Below are positions 4,895 to 30,594 of a stretch of DNA of 64,000 nucleotides, piece after piece. The position numbers and the translations under genes were made by a program. Location of the stretch: positions 186,001 to 250,000 of IMG/VR virus record IMGVR_UViG_3300031857_000002; one strand, 5' to 3'. The notes beneath the pieces were generated by a model that was not told the DNA's origin, did not search any database, and was given only the letters and a program-made list of their open reading frames with translations. Each line of letters opens with the position of its first letter. The stretch's first letter is position 1.

Positions 4895-6013
4895 TCAAGC
4901 TCTTGTGATAAAATTGTAGAATTCTGGGTGAGTGTGTTGATAACTCTGATTGGTAATAGCATCGTAGTCTTGAATGTACTGTAAGAATGGACCATAAGGA
5001 TCGTCTACCACTGTGATATAACTACTGATATGCGCCAATTCAGGCACACAGGCAATGCGAGTTAACACAGCATCACGCACATCTGCAGTCATTGCAGTGG
5101 CCGAGCAATGTGCCCGTAATCCTGGGAACCAAGTGAACGCATTGTAATTTTTCTTTAACCAAGGAAATGTTCTATTCAGAAAGGCATCTAATTCAGCAAG
5201 ATAAAAAATGTTCAACATGCTGTAGGTAGTTTGTGCAAAGTAGTCAAAGTCTGGGCATTGTTTGCGGAACCAGTGCATGTTGTCCACAACACGAGCCCAG
5301 TCAGCACCATGGCGTTGATATTCAAATCGTTGGTCCATGTCATCAATGCTGAAGTACATGGTCACATGTTCACACTTGTTTAGAATATCCAAAAACTTTT
5401 TGTTTGGTCGTTGGGTGCCATTGGTCACAACAACAACTTCTAAATCATTGTAGTCTCGATACTTGCCCATGTTGGCAAAGAACTCTAGGTAGTTGGATTC
5501 CATAAACGGCTCGCCGCCCTGCATCTGCACAGTTTTTAGTGAGAGAAACAATTCAGGATCATCAATCACAGGTTGATTTCTAGCTTGGTATCTAGTGGCA
5601 GGATCAAAGTAATTCCATTCTGGCGGTGCAATAGCCTGCCACTTTGAACTACTCCACGGACCGCATATGGCACAGGCAAGGTTGCACAAGTTTCCCAGAT
5701 TCAAATCAATCTTGCCATTGCGAGAGCCACGTGGACGAAGGTTAGCAGTTTGCCTTGAACTTTGCAAGCCCATGCTTTCTGTGTGATAGCAAGTGTTGCA
5801 TCCTGCTACAGGACGTCCTGCCTCAGTCTCATCTCTAAGATGCTGTATCCAAGGCGCAGAGTTATGGCCATGATAGATTTGATCAAACCCTGTATTCAAC
5901 ACAGCAGTTTCTGCGCTTTGATAAAGGCAGCATGGTTTATGTGTTAACTGATCGTTGGTTTGGCTGAGATACATGCGGTCCTTAAGTTCCGCACAACGGG
6001 TATCTTGATTCAT
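4895..6013 (-). CDS. Radical SAM protein with additional N-terminal Cys motif
   Basis: CNLACAIC (CxxxCxxC), GGEPF, N-terminal KPCC...CNTC. Confidence 0.85.
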   Translation of the reverse strand: MNQDTRCAELKDRMYLSQTNDQLTHKPCCLYQSAETAVLNTGFDQIYHGHNSAPWIQHLRDETEAGRPVAGCNTCYHTESMGLQSSRQTANLRPRGSRNGKIDLNLGNLCNLACAICGPWSSSKWQAIAPPEWNYFDPATRYQARNQPVIDDPELFLSLKTVQMQGGEPFMESNYLEFFANMGKYRDYNDLEVVVVTNGTQRPNKKFLDILNKCEHVTMYFSIDDMDQRFEYQRHGADWARVVDNMHWFRKQCPDFDYFAQTTYSMLNIFYLAELDAFLNRTFPWLKKNYNAFTWFPGLRAHCSATAMTADVRDAVLTRIACVPELAHISSYITVVDDPYGPFLQYIQDYDAITNQSYQHTHPEFYNFITRA

Positions 6014-6016
6014 TGT

Positions 6017-7453
6017 TTATTGTTTTTTGGCTTCGTCAATATAGTCGGCATTTTCTTTAAATGCTAACTTGTTGGTTCTCAAACGGTTGATGGCAATTTC
6101 CAGAGCACGATCCAGTTTTAGATTCAGTGCTTGATAGTTGTCAGCGGCCGCGCCACGCACCAGCAAGCGAGTGTCAAAGTCCTGTTGCATTGCTGGCGTT
6201 AACAGTCCTTTGTATTCTAGTTTTTGTGACAGAGCATCCAACTGCTGTTGCTTTTTGATAGCCTGATCCAACTGTGCAATTCTGTTTTTTAGTACAGAAT
6301 GTTTTTCGCCAGGCTGTGCCACAGGCACAGCCGGTGGATTGAATCGTTGCTTGGGTTGTTGTCCTGCTAGTTTTGTACTGTTAGCACGGAAATCCTGTTC
6401 CCATTGGTCAACTTCTTGTTGACGTTGTTGTTCAATGTTTTGCTTGGCTTGCTGTAATGCGTTGAATGCATCAGGCTTGAGTCCTTCATACGTAGCAGCC
6501 CAGCCTTGATTTTCACTAACCTTGTCCGAAGATTCAAATGAGAAATCACTTGGTTTAAACTGTGGATACTTGGCAATAACTTTGGCAATGTACCGGTCCA
6601 GGATTTCATAGGGTATATCTGTAGCAACCAATTTAGGGATCTTGCCTGATCTCACATAGATGCTGACCTTGCCTGGATGCATGATTCTTTGAACAAATGG
6701 CCCTTCTGCTACTGGCTGGTTCTCGCGACGTTGGTAACCAGCAGTCATTCCGCCTACAAAGTTTTGTGCATCCACTTCGTCCAACCCACGTTGTTTTCTT
6801 TGTTTGTGTATGCTCTTGAATTGATTACGTTTGTTCGGGCGTGGAAGGTTATCCAACGCACTCTCATCTACTACACCCATTGCTGTGTCCAACAGTTTGA
6901 CCACAGTGGCAGCTAGTTTAGGATTGGTTTGTGTCTTGGGGTACAAGCTCATTACCAGAGCTGTTTTGCGTTTTTCGTTTAGCCGGGGCCATGCACCGCG
7001 AATCTCTGTTGCTGATGTCATGCCAGGACCAAACTCCACAGTAGGCAAGTAGGTCATGTAAGCACGTTGGCTTAAAGGCTGATCGCTAGCGTCATTGTAT
7101 GGTTGTAGATAACTGGGTGTGCCATCTTTCTTAGTGCCTCCAGGACGAGGCTGTGATCCTGCGTCTTTTTCACTGCGCACAAAGATCAACTGTGTGTTGT
7201 TGGGATCGTACTTGTGTACAATTTCTTCAGCACGAAAAGGTGATTTAACCTGTGTAAATCTACCTTTTGGGACACCTGCTAGTTGTGCAAGTTTTTCTTT
7301 GACCGGGAATGGAAACGGTCGTGTGCTGGTATCATTGGTAGCAGCCACATATACATCAGCACCAGGAAATGCTTCTACGGCAGATTGATAAAGTGCGGCG
7401 TGCCCCGCATGAAAAGGGTGAAATCCCCCGGGCATGATTACTAACTGTTTCAT
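6017..7453 (-). CDS. HxGH (cytidylyltransferase-like) nucleotidyltransferase with long modular C-terminal extension
   Basis: PGGFHPFHAGH at the N-terminus and TSATEIR (KMSKS-like); the extension is punctuated by VDE/LDE/VAE/VSE/IDE. Confidence 0.7.
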   Translation of the reverse strand: MKQLVIMPGGFHPFHAGHAALYQSAVEAFPGADVYVAATNDTSTRPFPFPVKEKLAQLAGVPKGRFTQVKSPFRAEEIVHKYDPNNTQLIFVRSEKDAGSQPRPGGTKKDGTPSYLQPYNDASDQPLSQRAYMTYLPTVEFGPGMTSATEIRGAWPRLNEKRKTALVMSLYPKTQTNPKLAATVVKLLDTAMGVVDESALDNLPRPNKRNQFKSIHKQRKQRGLDEVDAQNFVGGMTAGYQRRENQPVAEGPFVQRIMHPGKVSIYVRSGKIPKLVATDIPYEILDRYIAKVIAKYPQFKPSDFSFESSDKVSENQGWAATYEGLKPDAFNALQQAKQNIEQQRQQEVDQWEQDFRANSTKLAGQQPKQRFNPPAVPVAQPGEKHSVLKNRIAQLDQAIKKQQQLDALSQKLEYKGLLTPAMQQDFDTRLLVRGAAADNYQALNLKLDRALEIAINRLRTNKLAFKENADYIDEAKKQ

Positions 7454-8454: not shown

Positions 8455-9117
8455 TTAGTTACGAGCCTGTATAGGCAGGGTCTTTCGAACCAGTTGTGGG
8501 CATGCTAGATTTATAAACAGCGCATCTTTTTCGTTGTCATGATCCACAAAGTAATTTGAAGGGATCCACATTCGTTGGCCGTTTAGTAACATTTTAAATC
8601 CTGGGCTGGGACGAAATTGATCTGCTCGTGTGAAAAAGTATTTCTTTATGAGTTCTCTTTGCGACTCATCTAGATAGCGTTCACGAAAATAGGTTCTAAA
8701 CTTGTGTTGGGGATTGTTTAGCACAACACAATCTGCGGGCAAACACACATCAGCTTGCTTGTGCTCAACTAACTTTGTGCCCGGATGTGCTACAACCGCC
8801 GCAAAATCTTCTGGAGTGTTGGTGTAGAACCACATGGTGTTGTTGCACACCACTTTCTTAAAGGGATTCTTGATGGCCAGCAAGAGATCACATACTTCGT
8901 GCAATCGTTCTTGATCACGATCTGATATAACTGTTCTAGTGCCACTGCTACGCCAATTCTGCAGATAGGTGTTACGCCAATAGATAGTGTTGTCAATACT
9001 TTTGTGGCTTAACTGGCGCATCATATTGCCTTCGGGAATCCACCATATCAAGCAGTGATAATACTGCTTGTAATATGGTTCGCTACGTTGCTCAATGTTT
9101 ACGTCAATATCAAACAT
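8455..9117 (-). CDS. Hypothetical protein
   Basis: Long ORF; start reassigned to MFDIDVN at 9117, which overlaps the clpA stop. Confidence 0.6.
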   Translation of the reverse strand: MFDIDVNIEQRSEPYYKQYYHCLIWWIPEGNMMRQLSHKSIDNTIYWRNTYLQNWRSSGTRTVISDRDQERLHEVCDLLLAIKNPFKKVVCNNTMWFYTNTPEDFAAVVAHPGTKLVEHKQADVCLPADCVVLNNPQHKFRTYFRERYLDESQRELIKKYFFTRADQFRPSPGFKMLLNGQRMWIPSNYFVDHDNEKDALFINLACPQLVRKTLPIQARN

Positions 9118-11371
9118 CTGGGAATCGGATAATACCGTCATCGTCCACCACAGGAATGATCTGTGCCACAGATTCAAAATGTACTGCGTCGTCTTGCATT
9201 GTGACAAACACATCACAGTCACTCAGTCGATCAAACAAGATCTTTTTAGATAGTGGTACCTTGATCAGCTCGTCAATCTTACGTGCCAAGGGTCTAGCAC
9301 CCATCTTGGGATCGTAGCCCTTGTCGGCCAACATGTCTATGACCTCTTCGCTGAGTACAAGTTTGATGTGTTTTTCATCCAAACTGGCCTTGAGCTGATC
9401 TGCAAACTTGATCACAATCTTCTTGATGGCCAATCGGTCCAGCTTGTTGAATCTGCAGATTTGATCAATACGATTACGCAGTTCTGGCTTGAAGAACTCT
9501 TTCATAGCTTTGTCTTCGTTACCAGTTTTTTCCTGACTTCCAAAACCAATAGCATTGCTTTCGTTGTCTCTAGCACCCAAGTTTGAAGTCAGGATAATAA
9601 TGGTGTTCTTAACATCCACACGCTTGCCTGCTGAACTAGTGATGTGCCCTTCGTCCAGCATCTGTAGCAAGATGTTGCTGACATCAGGGTGTGCTTTTTC
9701 AATTTCATCAAACAAGATGATTGAAAAAGGGTTCTTGGTAAGATCACTGATCAGCTTGCCGCCGCCAACGTTGCCATCTTCAAAGCCCACATAGCCTGGG
9801 GGTGCACCAATCAAACTTGATACTGTGTGTTTTTCCTGGTACTCACTCATGTCGTACTTCAACAGTTTCATGTCTAGGTTATCACTCAGCAGTTTGGCCA
9901 GTTCTGTTTTGCCTGTGCCTGTTGGACCCAAGAACAAGAAACTCGCCATAGGGCGAGTTGTTGCACCAATGCCTGCAAAGTTGATGTACACACGTTCCAG
10001 CACAGCATCCACTGCTTGATCCTGTCCGTAGAGCTTTTGCTTGATGTTGCTTTCAAGATCTATAATATTTGCTGAGCGTTCGTTCTGCAGTCGGTCCATT
10101 GGAATGCCTGCTACCTTGCTGACCTGTGCCATGATCATGTCTCGAGTGACAGTTACCAGGCCAGCATCCTTCACACGCTGTCGGGCACAAGCACCATCCA
10201 ACAAGTCAATACTCTTGTCAGGATTCTTCTTGTCATGAATATAACGTCCACTCAGTTCCACAGCCGCGGCCATTGCTTCTGTGTCGATCATCACATTGTG
10301 AAACTTCTCCAGTCGCGGACTCAGGCCAATAAGGATCTGTTCTGTGGTTGACGCATTGGGCTCGTCAATGCTCAAGCGATGGAATCTGCGCATCAACGCA
10401 CGATCTTTTTCAAATGACTCGTAGTATTCTTCCCATGTTGTGCTTGCAATAACTTTGAGGTTGCCCTTGGTGATTGCAGGTTTGAGCATGTTGGCAAAGT
10501 CCAGATTGCTTGACCCCGATGATCCTGCACCCTTCATGGTGTGTGCTTCGTCCACAAACAAGATACAGTTCTTCTTGGCTTCTAGTGCGGCAATAACTTG
10601 CTTGAACTTTTCTTCAAACTCACCGCGATACTTAGATCCTGCCAGTAATGAACCAATCTCCAGTCCCCACACTTCGTGACCTTTCAAGAACTCGGGCACG
10701 TTGTTAGCATGTATTTCTTGTGCAAGTCCGTCAATGATGGCAGTTTTGCCCACGCCTGGATCACCTACCATGAGCACATTGGCCTTGAATCGACGTGCCA
10801 ACACAGTGATCATGTCTTCTAGTTCTGCATTACGACCAATCAAGGGCTCCAGTTGATTCTTTGCGGCCATTGCTGAGATGTTGGTGCAATGCTCTTCCAA
10901 GATGTCTGTGGCCTGTTGTACATTCATTTTCACACTCTCGGGCTGGTGATTGCTTTGATAGAACTCAATAAACTCGGCCTTGCGGATACCATACTTGAGC
11001 AAGAAGTAGTGTGCATGACTGTTGTTTTCGGCCATGATGCTCAAGTACACATCAATCAGGCTCATGCTTCTGCGACCTGTAAACATGACCTGTACATTGG
11101 CACGATTAAATATGCGTTCCAGAGCTTGTGTTTTACGAGGTTGTAAATTTTCTGAAGCACTGATCAAATTGATCTGGCTGTCCAAGTAAGCATTGAGCTC
11201 TGTGTCCAGCAGATCTGCATCTGCACCAAATTTGTCTACCACACGTCTGAACGGCAAGTGGCGTAGCATGCCCAACAACAAGTGTTCTGTGACCACATAT
11301 TCGTGACACTTTTCTCTGGCCAATTTAACGGCTGCTTCGACCACTTGTTCAATTTCGGGATTGTTCTGCAT
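9110..11371 (-). CDS. clpA: ATP-dependent Clp protease ATP-binding subunit, ClpA-type
   Basis: Clp N-domain; Walker A GDPGVGKT and GPTGTGKT; pore loops KYRGEFE and GYVG; IGF loop; no ClpB M-domain. Start MQNNPE follows an AGGA RBS. Confidence 0.93.
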   Translation of the reverse strand: MQNNPEIEQVVEAAVKLAREKCHEYVVTEHLLLGMLRHLPFRRVVDKFGADADLLDTELNAYLDSQINLISASENLQPRKTQALERIFNRANVQVMFTGRRSMSLIDVYLSIMAENNSHAHYFLLKYGIRKAEFIEFYQSNHQPESVKMNVQQATDILEEHCTNISAMAAKNQLEPLIGRNAELEDMITVLARRFKANVLMVGDPGVGKTAIIDGLAQEIHANNVPEFLKGHEVWGLEIGSLLAGSKYRGEFEEKFKQVIAALEAKKNCILFVDEAHTMKGAGSSGSSNLDFANMLKPAITKGNLKVIASTTWEEYYESFEKDRALMRRFHRLSIDEPNASTTEQILIGLSPRLEKFHNVMIDTEAMAAAVELSGRYIHDKKNPDKSIDLLDGACARQRVKDAGLVTVTRDMIMAQVSKVAGIPMDRLQNERSANIIDLESNIKQKLYGQDQAVDAVLERVYINFAGIGATTRPMASFLFLGPTGTGKTELAKLLSDNLDMKLLKYDMSEYQEKHTVSSLIGAPPGYVGFEDGNVGGGKLISDLTKNPFSIILFDEIEKAHPDVSNILLQMLDEGHITSSAGKRVDVKNTIIILTSNLGARDNESNAIGFGSQEKTGNEDKAMKEFFKPELRNRIDQICRFNKLDRLAIKKIVIKFADQLKASLDEKHIKLVLSEEVIDMLADKGYDPKMGARPLARKIDELIKVPLSKKILFDRLSDCDVFVTMQDDAVHFESVAQIIPVVDDDGIIRFPDV

Positions 11372-11401
11372 GGGGTTCCTTTGTAAAACTATTATTGTGT
11401 T

Positions 11402-11430
11402 ATTATACTTGATGTTTTGATCACAAGCAA
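11402..11430 (-). promoter_or_regulatory. sigma70-type promoter upstream of clpA
   Basis: TTGCTT-N17-TATAAT on minus strand. Confidence 0.55.
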
Positions 11431-11444
11431 CCAATACGAAATAT

Positions 11445-15770: not shown

Positions 15771-16412
15771 TTATCTACCCATTACCCAGGGATCATTGAT
15801 AACTGGGGTACCATCTGCCCTGCGCATGAAATTACCACCATGCATATCCCAACGATATCCACGAGCTTTGCCAATTTTCATCAAGTCATCCAGAGTGGCA
15901 ACCATCTGTACCACTCCTTTGGCACCCAGTGCTTTCTCCAGTAGTGCATAATCCCCTTGTCTAAAATTTTTCAAGTATCTCACAAACGCACTCACGCTGA
16001 TACCCTTGTGTTCAATATAACTCCTAGACATCCAGCCTAGATCATCCAAGGCACGTCTCATTGGGCCTTGAGTTTTTTTTAAAGGTTCAGTACGAATCAT
16101 TAGATAGCGATTGTCATTCCACATAAAACTGTCATGACCATAAAACCTTGGCAACAAAGGATTGTCACTGTGCTTGCTACAATAATCGTACCAGGCAAAA
16201 AACATTTTTTGATCAGCACTGAAGTTTTGACGATTGCCTTGAGTGCCAAATACCTTTAGCACCAGGCCAGTACTAGGCTCCAAGTACGCAGTTTGATCCA
16301 CTCCTTTACCCAGGAATTGATAACCCTTGGCTTCTAGCTCAGATCTGATGCCTTTGTCTGTGGTTGAAAATTCTTCTAGATTTTGCTCGTCAATGAACTC
16401 CTGTGCTCTCAT
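15771..16412 (-). CDS. Protein kinase-like fold protein with capsid-targeting-like N-terminus
   Basis: LGKGVDQTAY (Gly loop), VLKV (catalytic Lys), DMHGGNFM (catalytic loop), INDP (DFG equivalent); starts MRAQEFIDE. Confidence 0.7.
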   Translation of the reverse strand: MRAQEFIDEQNLEEFSTTDKGIRSELEAKGYQFLGKGVDQTAYLEPSTGLVLKVFGTQGNRQNFSADQKMFFAWYDYCSKHSDNPLLPRFYGHDSFMWNDNRYLMIRTEPLKKTQGPMRRALDDLGWMSRSYIEHKGISVSAFVRYLKNFRQGDYALLEKALGAKGVVQMVATLDDLMKIGKARGYRWDMHGGNFMRRADGTPVINDPWVMGR

Positions 16413-22127: not shown

Positions 22128-22744
22128 ATTACTGTTACCTTTATGTCTGACGCTGTGTAGTCTTGATAGTATTCTGTTGCTGGAACTTGAATACCAACAG
22201 TTCTGGCCAGTTGTCTGTTGGTTTCCACAACTGTGGCAGGCCATTCACGGGCCGCACGACGATTGCCCTCATTTTCTCTGCGTATGCATTCGGCCATTTG
22301 ACGCAGGTCTCGGTAATAGTCCCGGTACAATGGATATGTTATTTTAAACTCCCCACATTTGACCCACCATCCTAGGCAAGCATCATCTGTGCGATCAATC
22401 AGCACAATAGGACAATCAGGCCAGGTTTTTTTGATATAATCGATATGATATCCAAACACATGGCTTTTGATAATACGTACACCTGTGCCACTAAATGGTG
22501 CATCAAACTCTGCTTCGTTCTGTTCTCGAGTGTATTGATCCAGGTGTTCAAAATGATCACCAAATTCCATGGCTGGTCCCCAGTACACTCCCATGTGTAA
22601 CAATTCCATTGTGCCCGAAGCGTCATGACGATATGTTCTGGCTTCTGAGTAATCAGTTGAGTCTACGTCGGCGCTGTAGTAAATGTTTTTTACTACGGAA
22701 CTCCATTTAGAGCCCGGGGCTCCACTTACAAAAATATATTTCAT
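22124..22744 (-). CDS. Sulfotransferase/P-loop-like hypothetical protein
   Basis: IFVSGAPGSKWSSV, IIKSH, IVLIDR pattern; start MKYIFV at 22744. Confidence 0.5.
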   Translation of the reverse strand: MKYIFVSGAPGSKWSSVVKNIYYSADVDSTDYSEARTYRHDASGTMELLHMGVYWGPAMEFGDHFEHLDQYTREQNEAEFDAPFSGTGVRIIKSHVFGYHIDYIKKTWPDCPIVLIDRTDDACLGWWVKCGEFKITYPLYRDYYRDLRQMAECIRRENEGNRRAAREWPATVVETNRQLARTVGIQVPATEYYQDYTASDIKVTVI

Positions 22745-23700
22745 TCTGGTCGGATCCTTCTGGCAATGGGTTGCCACGTTTGTTGTAGTCGGGCCATGCT
22801 AGCACGTACACCTGCTGGCGAGTGTTCTTCAGTGGTGATGTACATCATGTTTTCTCGAAACCTTGCTCCTGCTGCTGTTGAGCGTATGGCAGGTACAAAC
22901 TGTTCAGCATACCATTTCTGTATGTCTTGTGGAGTACCTGGTGGTAGTACCATGTTCCAGCAGCCGTGTATGCTGAGTCCTGGTGCTGCCTTGCTCATTA
23001 ACGGCGCAGATTCTAATCCTGGCAAGGGTCGTGTGTCAGCGATACCAATCAACTTGAGCTTGCCTGCAATCACATGCGGATATCCCACTGCCACAGGAGT
23101 AACGCCAAATTCCACATGCCCGCCCATGACATCTAATAGTGCCTGAGCAGGACCTTTGTACATGGCTGTTTCAACTCGATCACCGCCAGCAACATTTAGC
23201 TTGTCTTTAAGATATTCCACTGCTAATTTATGACCCCCTCCGCCAATGGCTATAGTAATGGGCCTTTCTTTCTTTCTAATGGCTGCCACCAGTTCTTCGG
23301 GCGTGTTGATACGACTGCTGGGGTGTGCCCAGAATGCTAGTGGACTACGTGCAATATTAGCAATGGGTTCTAGATCCATGGGATTATATTTAATTACCTT
23401 AGGATACCATACTTCAGGAGTGACCCAATTTGACTGACACGCAGGCACCGCAATAGTGTGTCCGTCTGCAGGTGTAGTCACAAAGTGATTGATAGCAATG
23501 TTGCCATCAGCACCCGGTCTGTGTTCAGACACAAATTTGGCACCGGTTGACTTTTCTACAATATCTGCTACAATACGAAATGATATTTCATTTCCGGCAC
23601 CTGGTCCATTGGGGAATATAACAGTGACAGGTTTGGTGGGTTGCCAGGCCCAGGCTGATGAGGCAAACAAGGCCACGGCAAGAAATTTTAGTGTACGCAT
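22741..23700 (-). CDS. Bug/TctC tripartite tricarboxylate transporter substrate-binding protein
   Basis: Signal peptide, KPVTVIFPNGPG, EHRPGADGNIA, MYKGPAQALLDVMGGHVE, LPPGTP. Confidence 0.88.
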   Translation of the reverse strand: MRTLKFLAVALFASSAWAWQPTKPVTVIFPNGPGAGNEISFRIVADIVEKSTGAKFVSEHRPGADGNIAINHFVTTPADGHTIAVPACQSNWVTPEVWYPKVIKYNPMDLEPIANIARSPLAFWAHPSSRINTPEELVAAIRKKERPITIAIGGGGHKLAVEYLKDKLNVAGGDRVETAMYKGPAQALLDVMGGHVEFGVTPVAVGYPHVIAGKLKLIGIADTRPLPGLESAPLMSKAAPGLSIHGCWNMVLPPGTPQDIQKWYAEQFVPAIRSTAAGARFRENMMYITTEEHSPAGVRASMARLQQTWQPIARRIRPE

Positions 23701-25360: not shown

Positions 25361-25708
25361 TCATTTGCCAGCGGCCCGTAAATTAGCGCCGTTGTTGAAG
25401 CTGGGGCTGTAAGGACTGTTGCCCTGTATGTTGCCTTTACGTGCTGACCATTCATAGCCTGCACGATGCCCTGAACAGTCCTTGGTACAGGGCGAGCCCA
25501 GGAAGCTGAGTTCATCCAGCTGTTCTTCCTGTAGCTTGGGACGTATTTCTACTATGGTGGCATTGTGATAGTCAGCCCAGGCACGTGCGGCTGTTTCACT
25601 AGGAAACGTTCTACGCCACTGTTCACGCTGATCTCTGCGGTTGTACGCATACCCCCAGGCTTCTACAGGCGTGCCGGCAATTTCTTCAAACAGCATCAGC
25701 AGTTCCAT
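25361..25708 (-). CDS. Hypothetical, probable internal head protein
   Basis: LQE/LDE sites and CTKDCSGHRAGYEW module. Confidence 0.55.
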   Translation of the reverse strand: MELLMLFEEIAGTPVEAWGYAYNRRDQREQWRRTFPSETAARAWADYHNATIVEIRPKLQEEQLDELSFLGSPCTKDCSGHRAGYEWSARKGNIQGNSPYSPSFNNGANLRAAGK

Positions 25709-27153
25709 TTGCGCAGAGCCAGAGCCTTGCGTGTGGGTTTGCCATTGGGCTTTTTCATTGGACCTTTAACACCGCCCATTCTTGCGCAGAAACTCTTGCG
25801 ACGCTTGGCAGCTTTGGATCCAGGCTTGAGTTTTGAAGGCTTGGTTGTGACTGCTGTTTGTAGTTTAGAACCAGGATTCTCTCTACGATAGCTGGCCACA
25901 CCCTTGGCGTTGAGTCCGCCCTTGGCGCTCTTGCCTTCTTTACGACGCCAGGCTGCTGTTTCGTACAGCATGTGGTCATCCATGGCTTCAAATGTTTCCC
26001 ACACAAGATCAACACTTACGCCTTTCTTTCGAGCCATTTCCTCGGCTAACTGATCCATGGCTTCAAACATCTCATCCACTTCAGGATCTACTTCGTCTGA
26101 TGCTTCCTCTGAGTACATGTAATCCCACACACTAACCAACATTGACTTGGCCACTGCAATCTTTTCTTGACACCATTCAGGCAAGTTATCACCTGAGTTG
26201 ATTAGATCATCCAAGCCGTCAACTGCGCGATCAAGAGTTTCTAGGTTGTTTTCTACCATGCCTGCTTCGTCATCGTACTCGGGATTGTAGTCTTCTGCCA
26301 TGCCTTGTTGACCCGACATATCCATCAGTTGTCGAACATAGAAATTGTAATAACCACGACGGCTGTTGTATTCTCTATCGCCTAGCACAGTCTTTAATGC
26401 AGCCACAGCATCACTTGCTTCTGAACCCTGCATTATTTTTAATGCGTCAGTCACAAGTGAATCAACTCTTTGTGAACTTTCTGTCACACCTTTGTTGTGT
26501 GCTTTCCAGGCTGTGGCATAGGCAATTGATTTTTCTTTATCAGACAACTTGCCATCTTTGGCATAGCCTTTTTTGATATGCTTGACCATGCGTTCTGCTT
26601 TGGCACCTGGAGGTGCGGCTTCGTCTACACCGGCCTTTTTCTTTTTGGCAATGGCAATAGCAGCCTGTTGTGCAGGATTTGCGGCTTCCGCTACACTTTG
26701 CTTGGATTTAATAATATTTCTAATGTCTGTAGCATTTACCCAACGTTTGACTTCACTGCGTGGGTAATATGTCTTTGATCCATTGTTAGACGTAACACCT
26801 TCTAACTTTTTGGGGAAATTACCTATATGCAACACAAGTGTTCGTAATTCATTTGAAGTAATACCTAGTTTTTCTGCAATCTCTTGAAAGCTCCAGGTAG
26901 GCTCTCTCCAGTCTGGGTGTTTCATATTTCCTGGAATATGGATTCCTCTGAGCTCGGGGGTAGAATTAGTACTAGATGTAGATGGGGAATATGTACTATC
27001 AAAACCTTCTTCTACTGACTCAGCAGGCACACAGTTGTTCACACGCACACCACCCTTGACCTTGGTTTTAGGGTTGCCAATCTTTTTGCCTGTCCAACAT
27101 TTGGGATCCAAGCGGACTTTTTCTTCAGAAACAATAAAGTCATTAAATTTCAT
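25696..27153 (-). CDS. Modular probable internal head polyprotein (HTH-like module; C-terminal DUF6321-like module)
   Basis: Starts MKFNDFIVSE; modules bounded by VEE/VAE/VDE/VTE/MAE/LYE; SFQEIAEKLGITSNEL HTH; basic C-terminus RRKSFCARM...ALRKWNC. Confidence 0.65.
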   Translation of the reverse strand: MKFNDFIVSEEKVRLDPKCWTGKKIGNPKTKVKGGVRVNNCVPAESVEEGFDSTYSPSTSSTNSTPELRGIHIPGNMKHPDWREPTWSFQEIAEKLGITSNELRTLVLHIGNFPKKLEGVTSNNGSKTYYPRSEVKRWVNATDIRNIIKSKQSVAEAANPAQQAAIAIAKKKKAGVDEAAPPGAKAERMVKHIKKGYAKDGKLSDKEKSIAYATAWKAHNKGVTESSQRVDSLVTDALKIMQGSEASDAVAALKTVLGDREYNSRRGYYNFYVRQLMDMSGQQGMAEDYNPEYDDEAGMVENNLETLDRAVDGLDDLINSGDNLPEWCQEKIAVAKSMLVSVWDYMYSEEASDEVDPEVDEMFEAMDQLAEEMARKKGVSVDLVWETFEAMDDHMLYETAAWRRKEGKSAKGGLNAKGVASYRRENPGSKLQTAVTTKPSKLKPGSKAAKRRKSFCARMGGVKGPMKKPNGKPTRKALALRKWNC

Positions 27154-27671
27154 TATCTTGCCTTTTTGGGTTGTTGTGCAGGTTGCACAGCATGCGGTAC
27201 ATTTTTGTACACACGTCGAGCAGGATCGTACACAGTCCGTAACGGACCGGCTCCTGCTAGTTTTTTCATACGTGACAAGGCAGCATCAAATGCATCAGCA
27301 TCCATGTTGCCTACTTTTTCCTTGGACTCGTCAAACCAGTCGTCAGATTCATCGTCAGTCATGTCATCTGCTGGGTCTGAATCCGTCATGTCATCGGCAT
27401 CGCGATCATTGTAGTAGTCCCAGTCACTGTCGTAGTTTTGTGGATCGGGTGCAATGGGTGGTCGAGCGTCTTCTGGCATCATGCCGTGAGTTTTAACATG
27501 TGTATCTAGGTCATCACGCTGTTTAGACAGTTGTTGAATCAGTTGTTTGTTGCCAGTTTGTATTGCTTGTCTAAGTTTTTCTTGAATAGCATCTGCTTGA
27601 TCATGATAGTCATTCATTCGCATTGGCCCAGGAACTTTGACATCTTCGTCTATAATGTGATTGATTTTCAT
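27153..27671 (-). CDS. Probable internal head protein
   Basis: Starts MKINHIIDE; acidic middle; LSRMKKLAG motif. Confidence 0.6.
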   Translation of the reverse strand: MKINHIIDEDVKVPGPMRMNDYHDQADAIQEKLRQAIQTGNKQLIQQLSKQRDDLDTHVKTHGMMPEDARPPIAPDPQNYDSDWDYYNDRDADDMTDSDPADDMTDDESDDWFDESKEKVGNMDADAFDAALSRMKKLAGAGPLRTVYDPARRVYKNVPHAVQPAQQPKKAR

Positions 27672-29008
27672 TGTGGTAGTCCTGCTAGTTCACGCATGCG
27701 GCGTAGTTGTTGTGATTCATATGTACCAGTTCTAATTGCATCACCTTTTTGTTGAGCAGTGGCCTGACGCAGTTGATCTCTAGTGCGTCGAGCTTGGTCC
27801 AAGTCACTTACATTGGCAGGTAACGGAGGTTCTTCTTCAGCATCCACTGCACTCAGCTTGGTTGGTATGGGACTATCTGTCTTGGGCGGTGCAGGCTCAC
27901 CAAACAAGTCTGCCTGACTTTGATCCACATCAGGTTCAACAGGTTCCCCAAACTTGGCAGGCAATTCCGTGTCCTGTTGTGACACAGGCGGATTTGTAAG
28001 TGGTTGTGCCACAGGCGGATTTGTGAGTTGCTGTGTCATTTGACTCATGGCAGCACTTGTGCTAGGTTTGTCAAGTATGTCTATCGTGGGCATGGGTGCT
28101 GGTGCAGGTTTGACCATGGGTACGGTGGCGCCTAATGGTTTAAATGTACTGGAACCTGACTTGAGCTTTGCTGGCTCAGGGGCAGGTTTGCGCTGTTCAG
28201 CATCTGCGGCACGTTGTTGAGTCTTTTCTGCACGACCAGTTGATCCAACAGTTCCACTGCCATAACTTCTGGTATCTGTATCTGTGTCAGATTTTTTACT
28301 GCTGTCTGAGTCTTTCTTACGCTCAGGCTCTGCGCCTGTTTGACGATGCATGGCATCAAGCTCTCGACTGAGCTTGTCTAGTTCATCACTTAGGGCGTCG
28401 TTTTCGTCATCCAAGCTGCCTATCTTTTTGCTCTGCTGACGGTTAACATCACGCATTTGCACATCAATGTCGTCTTGGCGTTGATTGATTTTTGCTTGTG
28501 CTTGTAGTTCTTGCCCTGTGTTTTTTTGCACATCCATGTCGTACATGAGCAAGGCCTCCATGTCGCTCTGTGCCTGTGGGTACTTGGCATAGGCCTGACG
28601 TAGTGCTGTGCTCAATGCGGCACTGCGCACCGATCCACGGTCTAGATCAGAGTTTTTTTTAGAATCGCGTTCTAACAAGTTGGGCTGTTGTGCTGTGCCT
28701 GTTCTGCGACCTAGTTTTTGTAGCAATGAGTTAAACTTGTCCCCACGACTCATGACATCGTACACAAATGCATAACGATCCTGGTCTGCAGGCAAGGTAT
28801 CATAGTAGTTGGCCACTGCTTCAATATCAGCATCATCTAGTTCAATCACTTGATTGTTGCCAAAGTCCAACTGTAGGTTTCTGCTGAGTCTTGGGCGTTT
28901 GTTTACATAGGCTCTGTGTAGCAGGGCAAAGTTGCCTGTGCCCATGGCTCTACTGCCTGGTGGCCCAAACCCAAATTCCATCAGAGTGACAACGTCTGTT
29001 ATTTTCAT
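27668..29008 (-). CDS. Probable internal head/core protein, coiled-coil and low-complexity
   Basis: Starts MKITDVVTLME; ends LRRMRELAGLPQ; TAAATA 7 nt upstream. Confidence 0.6.
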   Translation of the reverse strand: MKITDVVTLMEFGFGPPGSRAMGTGNFALLHRAYVNKRPRLSRNLQLDFGNNQVIELDDADIEAVANYYDTLPADQDRYAFVYDVMSRGDKFNSLLQKLGRRTGTAQQPNLLERDSKKNSDLDRGSVRSAALSTALRQAYAKYPQAQSDMEALLMYDMDVQKNTGQELQAQAKINQRQDDIDVQMRDVNRQQSKKIGSLDDENDALSDELDKLSRELDAMHRQTGAEPERKKDSDSSKKSDTDTDTRSYGSGTVGSTGRAEKTQQRAADAEQRKPAPEPAKLKSGSSTFKPLGATVPMVKPAPAPMPTIDILDKPSTSAAMSQMTQQLTNPPVAQPLTNPPVSQQDTELPAKFGEPVEPDVDQSQADLFGEPAPPKTDSPIPTKLSAVDAEEEPPLPANVSDLDQARRTRDQLRQATAQQKGDAIRTGTYESQQLRRMRELAGLPQ

Positions 29009-29018
29009 GATATGTTAT

Positions 29019-29456
29019 TTATTTGCTTTTAATTCCAGCCAGTTGACTTAGTCTTGCAAGCTCTTGATCAGTTAAGGGTTTGTCTAGCTTGGGAACTTTT
29101 GGCTTGACATTGGTGGGATAGTATGCTGACTTTGCACGATTTTTTGTGCCTAGAATCTGCTGTGCTGGCACTCGAACGCCTTCGTCTAGATTCAATTCAC
29201 TGTGCGGGAAAGCAATATAACTGTTGCCATTTTCGTCACCTGTGCGTATTACAAACACACCTGCATCGTCGTCACCAGACTCGTCTTGACCTATTTCCCA
29301 GCCCATTGCGGCCAGGGTTTGTTGTGCTCGGGCCATTTGTTGTTCTGTGCCATTCCACCATTGTGCAGCCAACTGCCGTAGAATGTGTTCTTCGTCAGGC
29401 TCACGATCGTCGCCACCAGGTGGGGCAAATTCTTTTAAAATTTGGTCAATATTCAT
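29019..29456 (-). CDS. Probable internal head protein
   Basis: Starts MNIDQILKE; ends ELARLSQLAGIKSK. Confidence 0.6.
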   Translation of the reverse strand: MNIDQILKEFAPPGGDDREPDEEHILRQLAAQWWNGTEQQMARAQQTLAAMGWEIGQDESGDDDAGVFVIRTGDENGNSYIAFPHSELNLDEGVRVPAQQILGTKNRAKSAYYPTNVKPKVPKLDKPLTDQELARLSQLAGIKSK

Positions 29457-29995
29457 TATCGTATCCCCGCTGCCGACTGCAGAGCCAAAGTTTCGGGTGT
29501 GGGCTTGTGAACTTTCTTAGGCTCAATGCCTGCGGCTGTGCGTACTGAATTTAGATCATCTTCGTGAGTGGCACGATAATCAGCTGGGGTTAACGGCACA
29601 GTTTCGGTCATGGCTTCCACTGACCAAGGCTGTGTCTTGCCGTCATAACGCATGGTCCAGTCTTTGGCATCAAACTCTGTGAGTGTGCCTAGGTCTTCAA
29701 TCAGTGTGCCTACCTGCTTGGCCACATTGGGTCTGCGACGCAGTTCTGCGTACACTAGATATCGACTGGGTTTGATTTCGCCCGGGCTACGGTCCGCGTC
29801 CAGCACAAAATCATAGCCCTTTTCAAACCATGAAACTAGATCTTTTGCTGCCTGTAGATCACGCACAAAAAAGCTCACTACCACAATGTCATCATCGTCG
29901 CCCATTTTTGATGCAAATTCATCAATATGAACGGTGCTTTTCATTATGCCTTCTAGGTCTTTGTACTGTAGGCCTTCTAACAAGTGTCTAAACAT
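29456..29995 (-). CDS. Hypothetical phage protein
   Basis: Starts MFRHLLE; ends with two AAGI motifs. Confidence 0.6.
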   Translation of the reverse strand: MFRHLLEGLQYKDLEGIMKSTVHIDEFASKMGDDDDIVVVSFFVRDLQAAKDLVSWFEKGYDFVLDADRSPGEIKPSRYLVYAELRRRPNVAKQVGTLIEDLGTLTEFDAKDWTMRYDGKTQPWSVEAMTETVPLTPADYRATHEDDLNSVRTAAGIEPKKVHKPTPETLALQSAAGIR

Positions 29996-30594
29996 TATAC
30001 TACTCCTGGTGCTGGTGCTTGTGGCTGGCCGGGCACAGCAGCCAAGTCTTGTTGTGCGTTTTCTGCCTTGGCATCGCTTTGCGTTTCTTGTTTGTCAAGA
30101 TCCTGCTCATAGGCATTGTCCAATTCTTCTAGATCAATGTCTTGATCTTCCATTTCGATTGATCCTGTTTTGATGTCGCTCATTAGGCTTTTGGGCATAA
30201 CAATCTCCACCAGCCACACAGGCTTTTTCACAATCTTGGCCTTGTGTGTGCCAGGAATATAATCCGACGGATCTGTAATCTTTATTGGGATTTTCATTTC
30301 TACTCTGCGATAATTAACTTCGCAATCAAATGGCAATAATCTTTTTCCGCCTCTGGGATCAGGCATGAGTTTTTCGGGCCACATAAATGTACAGCCCACA
30401 CGATATTTTGTTATTTCTGGACCGGCAACCAATTCACCAATCTCCCAGTTTTTAAATGCGTAGATGTCTACTTCGTCCAGCACACGCTCAAAGTCCAACA
30501 GCGTGGTGATTGAACCATCGCTCATGTAGATATCGCGGATGTTGTCGGCTACTTGCCAGTAGTCTGAGTGGTCTTTAAAGAGTTCTTTGTCCAT
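29995..30594 (-). CDS. Hypothetical phage protein
   Basis: 199-aa ORF with acidic tail; TAAATA 7 nt upstream. Confidence 0.65.
   Translation of the reverse strand: MDKELFKDHSDYWQVADNIRDIYMSDGSITTLLDFERVLDEVDIYAFKNWEIGELVAGPEITKYRVGCTFMWPEKLMPDPRGGKRLLPFDCEVNYRRVEMKIPIKITDPSDYIPGTHKAKIVKKPVWLVEIVMPKSLMSDIKTGSIEMEDQDIDLEELDNAYEQDLDKQETQSDAKAENAQQDLAAVPGQPQAPAPGVV

What the first reader, a model, noticed from the sequence alone, without database searches (positions are those of the whole stretch)
25696..27153. Bead-string polyprotein of about 8 unrelated modules separated by hydrophobic-x-Glu sites
Seen: IVSE | CWTGKK...NNCVP-AESVEE | an HTH-like module (SFQEIAEKLGITSNEL...YYPRSEVKRW) -SVAE | AANPAQQAAIAIAKKK-GVDE | APPG...AYATAWK-GVTE | helical module-GMAE | acidic module-MFE | ...LYE | basic RRKSFCARM...WNC. 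Similar junctions occur in 6017-7453 (QPVAEG). Inference: the module junctions are protease sites and possibly recombination joints, so one gene releases several small effectors, including an excisionase/AlpA-like DNA binder delivered at infection.
Basis: partly seen in the sequence, partly recalled or inferred. Interest (0 to 1): 0.68.

Follow-up and report, generated by a model that had tools for sequence, protein, structure and literature searches.

The report
Phage head cargo polyprotein, shuffled modules
A 320-kb T4-like jumbo phage strings about seven small unrelated protein modules into one gene, separated by short linkers that match its head protease's cutting motif, and related phages swap modules exactly at those linkers, so this looks like a new way of packing and diversifying head-carried phage proteins.

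Summary
The ORF is real: minus strand, window 25696-27153, 485 aa. It sits in a 320-kb jumbo phage with a T4-type head (gp23 capsid protein, gp20 portal, gp21-type S77 prohead protease). Its first ten residues resemble the T4 capsid targeting sequence.

Among 120 metagenomic homologs, shared blocks are 90-99% identical, yet there are 92 different module orders. Module gain and loss falls at hydrophobic-x-Glu junctions: E10, E49, E156, E178, E225, E287. E398 is a junction only at greater evolutionary distance. A regex-free indel test found 244 of 398 inserted blocks bounded by Glu on both sides, against about 8 expected.

The junctions lie in low-confidence linkers of the AlphaFold model. Neighbouring stand-alone genes with CTS-like starts appear as internal modules in relatives. 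Some homolog modules begin with a Tat signal 2-4 residues after a junction Glu, which only makes sense if the junction is cut.

Best reading: a CTS-targeted head-internal polyprotein cut by the prohead protease into small cargo pieces, ending in the very basic DUF6321. Cleavage, packaging and ejection are inferred, not shown. I class it as a new variant of the T4 internal-protein system.

The parts
25696..27153 (-). Whole polyprotein ORF, 485 aa plus stop. Its ATG overlaps the stop of the upstream gene (TAATG), and its end overlaps the next ORF by 13 nt.
27124..27153 (-). aa 1-10, MKFNDFIVSE: a capsid-targeting-sequence-like propeptide ending in VSE. Predicted cut after E10.
   Evidence: Resembles T4 CTS MKTYQEFIAE. 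A combinatorial junction in homologs. Similar starts occur on 8 ORFs of the genome.
27007..27123 (-). aa 11-49: basic two-Cys module (net +4) ending SVEE. Junction at E49.
   Evidence: 62 HSP ends fall exactly at residue 49. Charge.
26686..27006 (-). aa 50-156: Ser/Thr-rich linker plus a MerR/excisionase-like winged-HTH module ending SVAE. A rare optional module, present in about 5 of 120 homologs.
   Evidence: Absent exactly in P0003. HTH_17 E 0.024 and phrog_668 E 3e-4. AF2 pLDDT 71.8. Foldseek top hits are MerR-family, RacA and excisionase DNA-binding domains, E 0.06-0.4.
26620..26685 (-). aa 157-178: 22-aa Ala/Lys-rich helical module ending GVDE.
   Evidence: Junction with 10 different successors and 7 predecessors.
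26479..26619 (-). aa 179-225: basic helical module (net +6) ending GVTE. Also found in cyanomyovirus P-HM2 PHM2_112.
   Evidence: (phrog_12887)
26293..26478 (-). aa 226-287: neutral helical module ending QGMAE.
   Evidence: 20 different successor modules in homologs. pLDDT 72-80.
25960..26292 (-). aa 288-398: strongly acidic helical module (net -27) ending LYE. It behaves as one unit with the next module among close homologs.
   Evidence: A shorter acidic module precedes DUF6321 in many small proteins.
25699..25959 (-). aa 399-485: DUF6321, very basic (net +24, pI 11.8). This is the constant C-terminal module.
   Evidence: PF19846 75.6 bits against a cut-off of 28.5. Thousands of 90-150-aa proteins are 87-100% identical. 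Many consist of a CTS directly followed by this domain, and CTS-less ones start at the same residue.
27153..27671 (-). Neighbour gene C, 172 aa. It has a CTS-like start (MKINHIIDE) and a constant C-terminus. Orthologues are 353 and 281 aa with extra modules. Its core occurs as an internal module of polyprotein homolog P0105.
27668..29008 (-). Neighbour gene B, 446 aa. It has a CTS-like start, a coiled-coil middle and a C-terminal RELAGL-type tail.
29019..29456 (-). Neighbour gene A, 145 aa. It has a CTS-like start (MNIDQILKE). Orthologues are 271 and 641 aa. Its core occurs as an internal module of polyprotein homolog P0035.
29456..30594 (-). Two conserved virion structural protein homologs (179 and 199 aa) at the head of the operon, next to divergent PhoH.
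   Evidence: phrog_13138 and phrog_12928. The PA5oct homolog gp189 was detected in virions by ESI-MS/MS.
25361..25708 (-). Downstream 115-aa ORF of the same operon. It has hxE sites and a Cys-containing C-terminal module after QLDE. One orthologue carries a short insertion.

Best explanation
The gene encodes a head-internal cargo polyprotein of a T4-type jumbo phage.

Proposed mechanism:
1. The first ten residues act like the T4 capsid targeting sequence and bring the precursor into the scaffolding core of the prohead (inferred).
2. The phage's gp21-type serine protease, which in T4 cuts after Glu in L/I-x-E, cuts the exposed linkers. Their consensus is [Q/N/K][Q/E]-G-[V/M]-A-E | [G/A/D/S] (inferred).
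3. This frees about seven small pieces: a basic two-Cys peptide, an optional MerR/excisionase-like winged-HTH module, two basic helical peptides, a neutral helical domain, a very acidic domain, and the very basic DUF6321.
4. Basic pieces probably stay on the packaged DNA and leave with it at infection. The acidic piece probably masks DUF6321 until cleavage (both inferred).

Shown directly:
- The same linker is the joint at which related phages insert, delete and swap modules.
- The gene and three neighbours form a diversifying cassette locus, the single-ORF counterpart of the variable internal-protein genes of T-even phages.
For: Phage type:
- T4 gp23-family MCP, T4 gp20 portal and Peptidase_S77 protease (81.8 bits; 32% identical to T4 gp21, with the GVSSRG and HP motifs kept).
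- The MCP is 65.6% identical to that of jumbo phage PA5oct.

Targeting sequence:
- The T4 CTS is MKTYQEFIAE, and T4 internal proteins are cut once next to it. CTS residues 8 and 10 govern processing.
- Known T4 substrates show LTE-65 in gp23, LRE-10 in gp24 and ITE-6 in Alt.
- The window protein starts MKFNDFIVSE. Eight ORFs of the genome have such starts, five of them MRAQEFITE-like on otherwise unrelated proteins.

Module joints:
- 92 architectures among 120 homologs. Breakpoints fall at E10, 49, 156, 178, 225 and 287.
- The regex-free indel test gave 244 of 398 against about 8 expected.

Linkers:
- The junction Glu residues lie in pLDDT<50 segments. The hxE sites that are not joints lie inside helices.
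- Codons at the junctions differ while P3 and P1 are kept, so the constraint is on the peptide.

Stand-alone genes and internal modules are interchangeable:
- The cores of genes 29019-29456 and 27153-27671 occur as internal modules in P0035 and P0105.
- Minimal proteins consisting of a CTS plus DUF6321 cut at the residue equivalent to E398. CTS-less DUF6321 proteins start at that same residue.

Tat signals:
- Four distinct Tat-signal-like modules in homologs each start 2-4 residues after a junction Glu.

Context:
- The operon begins with two virion structural protein homologs; the PA5oct homolog of the 199-aa one (gp189) was MS-detected in virions.
- In a T7-like pelagiphage, DUF6321 lies between the scaffold and capsid genes.
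Against: - There is no direct evidence of cleavage, of presence in virions or of ejection. The phage is known only from metagenomes.
- The CTS resemblance is short (10 aa), and positions 2-5 differ from T4.
- PA5oct, the nearest cultured relative, lacks the polyprotein cluster, so its proteomics cannot be transferred.
- DUF6321 also occurs in podoviruses that have no gp21-type protease. At least that module therefore does not depend on processing.
- The junction logo was built on pieces split at [LIVMP]xE, so P3 and P1 in it are fixed by construction. Only one search is free of that bias.
- Small neutral or acidic pieces might simply leave the head, as T4 propeptides do.
- No module has a demonstrated function.
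Confidence: 0.7

Rival explanations
1. The precursor is cleaved in the head, but the pieces are not effectors. They would be structural or physico-chemical filler: core or scaffold-associated peptides and DNA counter-ions. Basic pieces, above all DUF6321, would neutralise packaged DNA. Acidic pieces would be expelled, with no role after injection.
For: - Charges are extreme and nearly balanced: -27 for aa 288-398 against +24 for DUF6321.
- Most pieces are short helical peptides without recognisable catalytic domains.
- DUF6321 is 87-100% conserved across very different phages. That fits a generic DNA-packing role better than an arms-race effector.
- T4 scaffold gp22 carries many hxE motifs.
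Against: - 92 architectures in 120 homologs and rapid module turnover look like diversifying accessory cargo, not packing material.
- Modules with Tat signals and a TonB_C-like domain, and a winged-HTH module, imply specific targets in the next host.
Confidence: 0.2
2. The protein is not cleaved. It would be an intact multi-domain beads-on-a-string protein. The conserved linkers would persist only because they are flexible spacers and serve as micro-homology for recombination.
For: - Cleavage is not demonstrated.
- Linker conservation would also favour homologous recombination.
- Pfam already records DUF6321 alongside other DUF domains in multi-domain proteins.
Against: - The conserved positions are exactly P3 hydrophobic and P1 Glu, with P2 free and codons varying. 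That is a protease signature, not a DNA one.
- The genome has the matching protease.
- Internal Tat signals would not work without a free N-terminus.
- The N-terminal propeptide of stand-alone versions equals the internal linker.
Confidence: 0.08
3. The pattern is chance or an assembly artefact: metagenome chimeras joined at short repeats.
For: All homologs come from metagenome assemblies. Strain mixtures can produce chimeric contigs.
Against: - The same protein is on 10 contigs.
- Junction repeats are only about 12-15 nt, shorter than assembler k-mers.
- Synteny is kept on 292-kb, 320-kb and 361-kb contigs, with different module sets at the same locus.
- A cultured cyanophage has the same kind of gene.
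- Statistics.
Confidence: 0.02

Closest known systems
T4 internal proteins IPI/IPII/IPIII and Alt: CTS-targeted, gp21-processed, ejected with the DNA
   Same: - About 10-aa N-terminal targeting propeptide ending in hydrophobic-x-Glu.
- T4-type head with an S77 prohead protease.
- Basic cargo.
- A variable accessory locus with only the targeting sequence conserved.
   Different: - T4 cargo proteins are separate genes, each cut once, or at both ends in Alt.
- Here up to a dozen cargo modules are concatenated in one ORF.
- Each is delimited by a consensus site, and the sites also act as shuffling joints.
- P3 is mostly Val or Met rather than Leu or Ile.
Inner-body and ejection proteins of phiKZ, 201phi2-1 and SPN3US giant phages
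   Same: Head-packaged proteins of jumbo phages are cut after Glu by a gp21-related prohead protease, sometimes at several sites.
   Different: - Their motif is S/A/G-x-E or A-x-E.
- The multiple cuts there chop long propeptides for removal, leaving one mature protein.
- No combinatorial strings of independent small modules are described.
Polyvalent proteins of phages and conjugative elements (Iyer et al. 2017, PMC5512222)
   Same: Many unrelated domains sit in one polypeptide. The protein is predicted to be packaged and delivered with the DNA, and release by proteolysis is proposed.
   Different: - Those are large proteins of enzymatic conflict domains, often with an embedded peptidase (MPTase or assemblin-like).
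- Here the modules are 20-110 aa with no embedded peptidase and no known conflict domain.
- Processing would be in trans, by the prohead protease at a fixed linker motif.
Pfam DUF6321 (PF19846) and PHROGs 4689, 727, 3477, 10346
   Same: The C-terminal module is a clear member.
   Different: The family has no assigned function. No paper in the searchable library mentions it.

Membership tests
T4-type CTS-targeted head internal proteins | N-terminal propeptide of about 10 residues resembling the T4 CTS and ending in hydrophobic-x-Glu | tested here: met
   MKFNDFIVSE against T4 MKTYQEFIAE. Eight ORFs with such starts in this genome.
T4-type CTS-targeted head internal proteins | Phage encodes a gp21-type (Peptidase_S77) prohead protease and a T4-type head (gp23, gp20) | tested here: met
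   PF03420 81.8 bits, PF07068 325 bits, PF07230 352 bits. 32% identity to T4 gp21.
T4-type CTS-targeted head internal proteins | Protein is incorporated into proheads and cut by the protease | not testable with these tools
   No isolate and no proteomics. The only evidence is context next to virion protein homologs.
T4-type CTS-targeted head internal proteins | Mature protein is ejected into the host with the DNA | not testable with these tools
   Inference only.
Viral polyprotein (several mature products from one ORF, cut by a viral protease) | Independent modules separated by a recurring protease-type site in exposed linkers | tested here: met
   Module joints at hxE. Linkers have pLDDT<50. 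Modules exist as stand-alone genes.
Viral polyprotein (several mature products from one ORF, cut by a viral protease) | Demonstrated cleavage products | not testable with these tools
   Indirect only: Tat signals directly after junctions in homologs.
DUF6321 (PF19846) | Match to the family HMM above the gathering score | tested here: met
   75.6 bits against 28.5, aa 407-483.
MerR/excisionase-type winged HTH (Pfam HTH_17) | Match above the gathering score, or a clear structural match | tested here: inconclusive
   HTH_17 scores 15.4 bits against 27. The AF2 model has pLDDT 71.8. The best Foldseek hits are all MerR, RacA or excisionase domains, but E is 0.06-0.4 and TM 0.4-0.6.
Polyvalent proteins (Iyer et al. 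2017) | Multiple conflict-type enzymatic or DNA-binding domains, commonly with an embedded peptidase | tested here: not met
   Pfam and PHROGs find only DUF6321 and a weak HTH. No peptidase domain.
phiKZ/SPN3US-type processed ejection proteins | Cleavage motif S/A/G-x-E or A-x-E | tested here: not met
   P3 at 244 junctions is V 134, M 46, I 27, L 20, P 17. The regex-free test gives the same P3 class.

The most novel reading that the evidence does not exclude
Prohead-protease sites serve as universal connectors of a combinatorial cargo-cassette system. Any small protein flanked by the QGVAE-type linker can be spliced into a CTS-led polyprotein, packed into the head, released by the protease and delivered to the next host. 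Some released modules carry Tat signals, one of them with a TonB_C-like domain. After injection they would be re-exported by the host Tat pathway to the periplasm. That route for phage-delivered proteins has not been described.
Probability: 0.3. Interest if true: 0.85.

Novelty: new variant of a known kind. Interest (0 to 1): 0.72.

Why it matters
- It would extend the T4 internal-protein paradigm (targeting peptide, prohead protease, ejected cargo) to a polyprotein format. One promoter and one targeting peptide would load many different small proteins.
- It would show protease-site linkers doubling as recombination joints, a protein-level analogue of exon shuffling.
- It gives a first functional context to DUF6321 and to several other small phage DUF modules. 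These are very abundant in marine and freshwater viromes, with thousands of near-identical copies in cyanophages, pelagiphages and jumbo phages.
- It suggests a bioinformatic rule for finding virion-delivered phage proteins: a CTS-like start plus QGVAE-type linkers.
- The linker and CTS could also be useful for packaging foreign proteins in phage heads, as is already done with the T4 CTS.

Tried and rejected
- Megablast of 20 kb of the window against cultured phages: no match.
- Search for stand-alone relatives of the HTH module (aa 50-156): only one 76-aa partial hit. The module is rare and its alignment stayed shallow.
- Sequence search of PDB chains with the whole protein: nothing meaningful, best E 0.79.
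- Literature search for DUF6321: no paper.
- Searches for prohead-protease polyproteins: nothing of this kind.
- Cyanophage proteomics paper: T4-GC119 is mentioned only as a hypothetical protein in a mobile cassette, and its supplements held no entry.
- T4 late promoter TATAAATA: zero matches in the window, 1.7 expected. This gives no promoter-based timing evidence.
- First attempt at indel mapping from gapped BLAST HSPs: uninformative because BLAST splits long indels. It was replaced by global alignments.
- MFE-364 as a junction: rejected among close homologs.
- phiKZ-type motif: rejected.
- Complex prediction and the large representative search were not used. The family scans and word searches left nothing open that those tools would decide.
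Full report
**What is at the coordinates.** Window 25696-27153 holds one uninterrupted ORF of 485 codons on the minus strand. Its ATG overlaps the stop of the upstream gene (TAATG), and its last 13 nt overlap the start of the next ORF. It is therefore part of a tightly packed minus-strand operon. The same protein sequence is on record from 10 contigs.

**The genome.** The window is bases 186001-250000 of a 320,175-bp virus record, G+C 44%.
- The genome has a T4-type head module. This comprises a gp23-family major capsid protein (325 bits), a gp20 portal (352 bits), an acidic and a coiled-coil scaffold protein, and a Peptidase_S77 prohead protease (81.8 bits).
- The protease is 32% identical to T4 gp21 and keeps the HP and GVSSRG motifs.
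- The capsid protein is 65.6% identical to that of Pseudomonas jumbo phage PA5oct and a 349-kb Vibrio phage. The phage therefore belongs with the PA5oct/RaK2-like jumbo myoviruses.

**Checking the observation.**
- Hydrophobic-x-Glu motifs are moderately enriched: 15 against 8.3 +/- 2.5 in shuffles. The narrower [GS][LIVM]xE is strongly enriched: 6 against 1.1, P = 0.0008.
- The word search returned thousands of relatives. The best 120 share blocks at 90-99% identity but cover only 41-74% of the query, and they range from 268 to 844 aa.
- Mapping ungapped matches onto the query gives breakpoints clustered at residue 49 (62 HSP ends), 146-160, 170-182, 211-231 and 269-298, with a minor cluster at about 347-356.
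- 74% of 379 breakpoints lie within 5 residues of the six Glu at 10, 49, 156, 178, 225 and 287, which cover 13.6% of the sequence. Random sets of six Glu match this in 3 of 20000 trials.
- P0003 (378 aa, also on a 361-kb contig) is the window protein minus exactly residues 50-156.
- P0056 (690 aa) carries several extra modules, each ending QGVAE.
- When pieces are clustered, the boundaries at E10, E49, E156, E178, E225 and E287 have up to 20 different successors or predecessors. The hxE sites at 94, 301, 326, 361, 364, 371, 386 and 398 have essentially one. There are 92 distinct architectures among the 120 proteins.
- That analysis split sequences at the motif, so I added a motif-free test. 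Global alignments of all 7140 pairs gave 398 distinct clean indel blocks. Of these, 244 can be placed to follow a Glu and end in a Glu, and 243 of them have L/I/V/M/P at P3 on both sides. About 8 are expected. Most of the remainder are displaced by 1-3 residues at the same junctions.

**E398 and E364.**
- E398 (LYE) is not a joint among close relatives, but it is a joint at greater distance.
- Thousands of 90-150-aa proteins carry the last 87 residues at 87-100% identity. Many consist of a 9-10-residue start such as MRAHEFVTE or MKITEILTE followed directly by the residues that follow E398 in the window protein.
- Versions without such a start begin (MAKT...) at that same position. The P-HM2 homolog has SVSE at that point.
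- MFE-364 has no support.
Its HxGH motif is at residues 12-18, it has no targeting-like start, and only its N-terminal domain has phage relatives. The parallel is rejected.

**Anatomy of the protein**.
- aa 1-10: propeptide.
- aa 11-49: basic two-Cys peptide, net +4.
- aa 50-156: Ser/Thr-rich linker plus winged HTH.
- aa 157-178: Ala/Lys-rich helix.
- aa 179-225: basic helical hairpin, net +6.
- aa 226-287: neutral helical domain.
- aa 288-398: acidic helical domain, net -27.
- aa 399-485: DUF6321, net +24, pI 11.8.

The AlphaFold model has pTM 0.21, so there is no fixed arrangement between beads. Its low-confidence segments (1-82, 112-126, 153-167, 169-189, 219-229, 282-299) contain every junction Glu. 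The hxE sites that are not joints lie inside helices.

The HTH module modelled alone reaches pLDDT 71.8, with a strand-helix-helix-strand-helix layout. Its best Foldseek hits are uniformly MerR-family, RacA, BldC and excisionase DNA-binding domains. They are weak, however: E 0.06-0.4 and TM 0.4-0.6. Sequence profiles agree weakly: HTH_17 E 0.024 and phrog_668 E 3e-4. The module is optional and rare.

**Why the junctions are most likely protease sites.**
1. T4 internal proteins carry the capsid targeting sequence MKTYQEFIAE and are cut once next to it (PMC8442874). Positions 4 and 7 matter for targeting, and positions 8 and 10 for processing (PMC9026906). T4, phiKZ, 201phi2-1 and SPN3US prohead proteases all cut after Glu (PMC5694885). 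T4's own substrates read from its genome show LTE-65 in gp23, LRE-10 in gp24 and ITE-6 in Alt. That gp21 prefers Leu or Ile at P3 is textbook knowledge (Black, Showe and Steven 1994), which I did not re-read here.
2. The window protein starts MKFNDFIVSE. Its neighbours start MKINHIIDE, MKITDVVTLME and MNIDQILKE. Five otherwise unrelated ORFs elsewhere in the genome start MRAQEFITE or a near variant. One of these is GNAT-like (Pfam E 0.009) and ends in a further basic module after an STMAE site.
3. The capsid protein has ILE-34 and LKE-42 flanking the position that aligns with the T4 gp23 maturation site.
4. The junction pattern fixes P3 (V, M, I, L, P) and P1 (Glu), while P2 and the codons vary. 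This is what a protease imposes, not what DNA micro-homology would.
5. Stand-alone genes and internal modules are interchangeable. The core of gene 29019-29456 sits inside P0035, preceded by SALKE where the stand-alone gene has its MNIDQILKE start. The core of gene 27153-27671 sits inside P0105.
6. Four distinct modules in homologs begin 2-4 residues after a junction Glu with a textbook twin-arginine signal: an S/T-R-R-x-F-L motif, an uncharged stretch and an AxA-like end. These are in P0026/P0112, P0054, P0106 and the orthologue of gene C on L005. Pfam TAT_signal hits them at exactly those positions, below its cut-off (15-20.6 bits against 22.7). One of these modules also has a TonB_C-like stretch, E 0.001. 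A Tat signal in the middle of a protein makes sense only if the junction is cut. The window genome itself has no such module.

**The locus.**
- Two related contigs of 361 kb and 292 kb keep the same gene order. That order is PhoH, a 199-aa gene, a 179/162-aa gene, gene A, gene B, gene C, the polyprotein, a 115-120-aa gene, and then genes with TctC domains.
- Gene A is 145, 271 or 641 aa. Gene C is 172, 353 or 281 aa. The polyprotein is 485, 378 or 466 aa.
- In each of the three, the start and the C-terminal part are constant and the inner modules differ, bounded by hxE.
- The two genes at the head of the operon match PHROGs annotated as virion structural proteins. The PA5oct homolog of the 199-aa protein, gp189, was detected in virions by ESI-MS/MS and also lies next to PhoH. 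PA5oct has no polyprotein cluster.
- In the cyanomyovirus P-HM2, a 297-aa homolog with two of the same modules and QVDE, QVSE and SVSE junctions lies between the terminase subunit genes.
- In the T7-like pelagiphage Eistla, an 81-aa DUF6321 gene lies between the scaffold and capsid genes.
- DUF6321 clusters are virus-only and co-occur with other small DUF modules.

**Mechanism, with shown and inferred steps marked.**
- Shown: modular structure, junction motif, shuffling at junctions, flexible linkers, the phage's T4-type protease and head, the CTS-like starts, and the equivalence of stand-alone and internal modules.
- Inferred: targeting to the prohead core by the first ten residues.
- Inferred: cutting after each junction Glu by the S77 protease during head maturation.
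- Inferred: retention of the basic pieces on DNA, and their exit with it.
- Inferred: the acidic domain acts as a charge mask for DUF6321 until cleavage.
- Inferred: specific post-injection roles for optional modules, namely DNA binding by the HTH module and periplasmic action by the Tat modules of relatives.
- I put 0.7 on the cleaved head-cargo polyprotein. Within that, I consider it roughly even whether the pieces act as effectors or mainly as packing peptides.

**Comparison with known systems.**
- It works like the T4 internal-protein/Alt system and like the processed ejection proteins of phiKZ-type phages. It shares the multi-cargo logic of the polyvalent proteins of Iyer et al..
- It differs from all three. 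T4 cargo proteins are separate genes cut once or twice. The phiKZ-type motif has S/A/G at P3, and its multiple cuts remove propeptides. Polyvalent proteins are large enzymatic multidomain proteins, often with their own peptidase.
- The hypervariability of T-even internal-protein genes, with only the CTS conserved, is known. Here the variability is packed inside ORFs, at protease-site linkers.
- I found no description of such phage polyproteins, or of DUF6321, in the searchable library. That library is incomplete.

**Verdict.** Two side claims are rejected.

**Limits.**
- Only metagenomic sequence is available, with no reads, RNA or proteomics.
- The HTH alignment is shallow.
- The junction logo is partly circular.
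- No alternative genetic code was needed.

Noticed in passing
window 15771-16412 (-); also G000:C1:320-703, 703-1068, 183749-184360, 311030-311389: Five otherwise unrelated ORFs start with MRAQEFITE-like peptides, very close to the T4 capsid targeting sequence. One (C1:183749-184360) is GNAT-like and ends in a basic Cys-containing module after an STMAE site. They are probably further head-packaged cargo proteins.
   Followed up: partly
window 27153-27671, 27668-29008, 29019-29456 (C-terminal tails); G000:C1:42002-43096: A [RK]x(1-4)LAG[LIAV] motif occurs only 7 times in the whole proteome. Four of these are in the C-terminal tails of the gp22-like scaffold protein (ends ...KRLAGL) and of three genes of this cluster. 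It may be a second, C-terminal head-incorporation signal. T4 gp22 does not end this way.
   Followed up: partly
homologs P0026, P0054, P0106, P0112; L005:4940-6001: Internal modules begin with twin-arginine (Tat) signal-like sequences 2-4 residues after a junction Glu. The P0054 module also has a TonB_C-like stretch. None occurs in the window genome.
   Followed up: partly
window 25960-26292 and 25699-25959 (-): The acidic module (net -27) and the adjacent DUF6321 (net +24) are nearly charge-balanced. A shorter acidic module also precedes DUF6321 in many small proteins. This suggests an intramolecular mask released by cleavage.
   Followed up: no
window 22741-23700 (-): A 319-aa ORF with a signal-peptide-like start. 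Its syntenic counterparts on L005 and L006 carry Pfam TctC (Bug-family tricarboxylate-binding protein) and are duplicated on L005. It may be an auxiliary metabolic gene and a hint towards a proteobacterial host.
   Followed up: no
window 4895-6013, 6017-7453, 9110-11434 (-): A radical SAM protein, a cytidylyltransferase-like protein with a long unassigned C-terminal half, and a ClpA/ClpB-like ATPase (phrog_4871, E 4e-233). PA5oct has the Clp-like gene directly after its two virion protein genes, so about 18 kb including the polyprotein cluster is extra here.
   Followed up: no
window 25361-25708 (-): The 115-aa ORF overlapping the polyprotein's end has several hxE sites and a conserved Cys-containing C-terminal module after QLDE. 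The L005 orthologue has a short insertion just before that site. It is probably part of the same cargo cluster.
   Followed up: no
whole window: There is no T4 late-promoter consensus TATAAATA anywhere in 64 kb (1.7 expected). Late transcription signals of this phage differ from those of T4.
   Followed up: no
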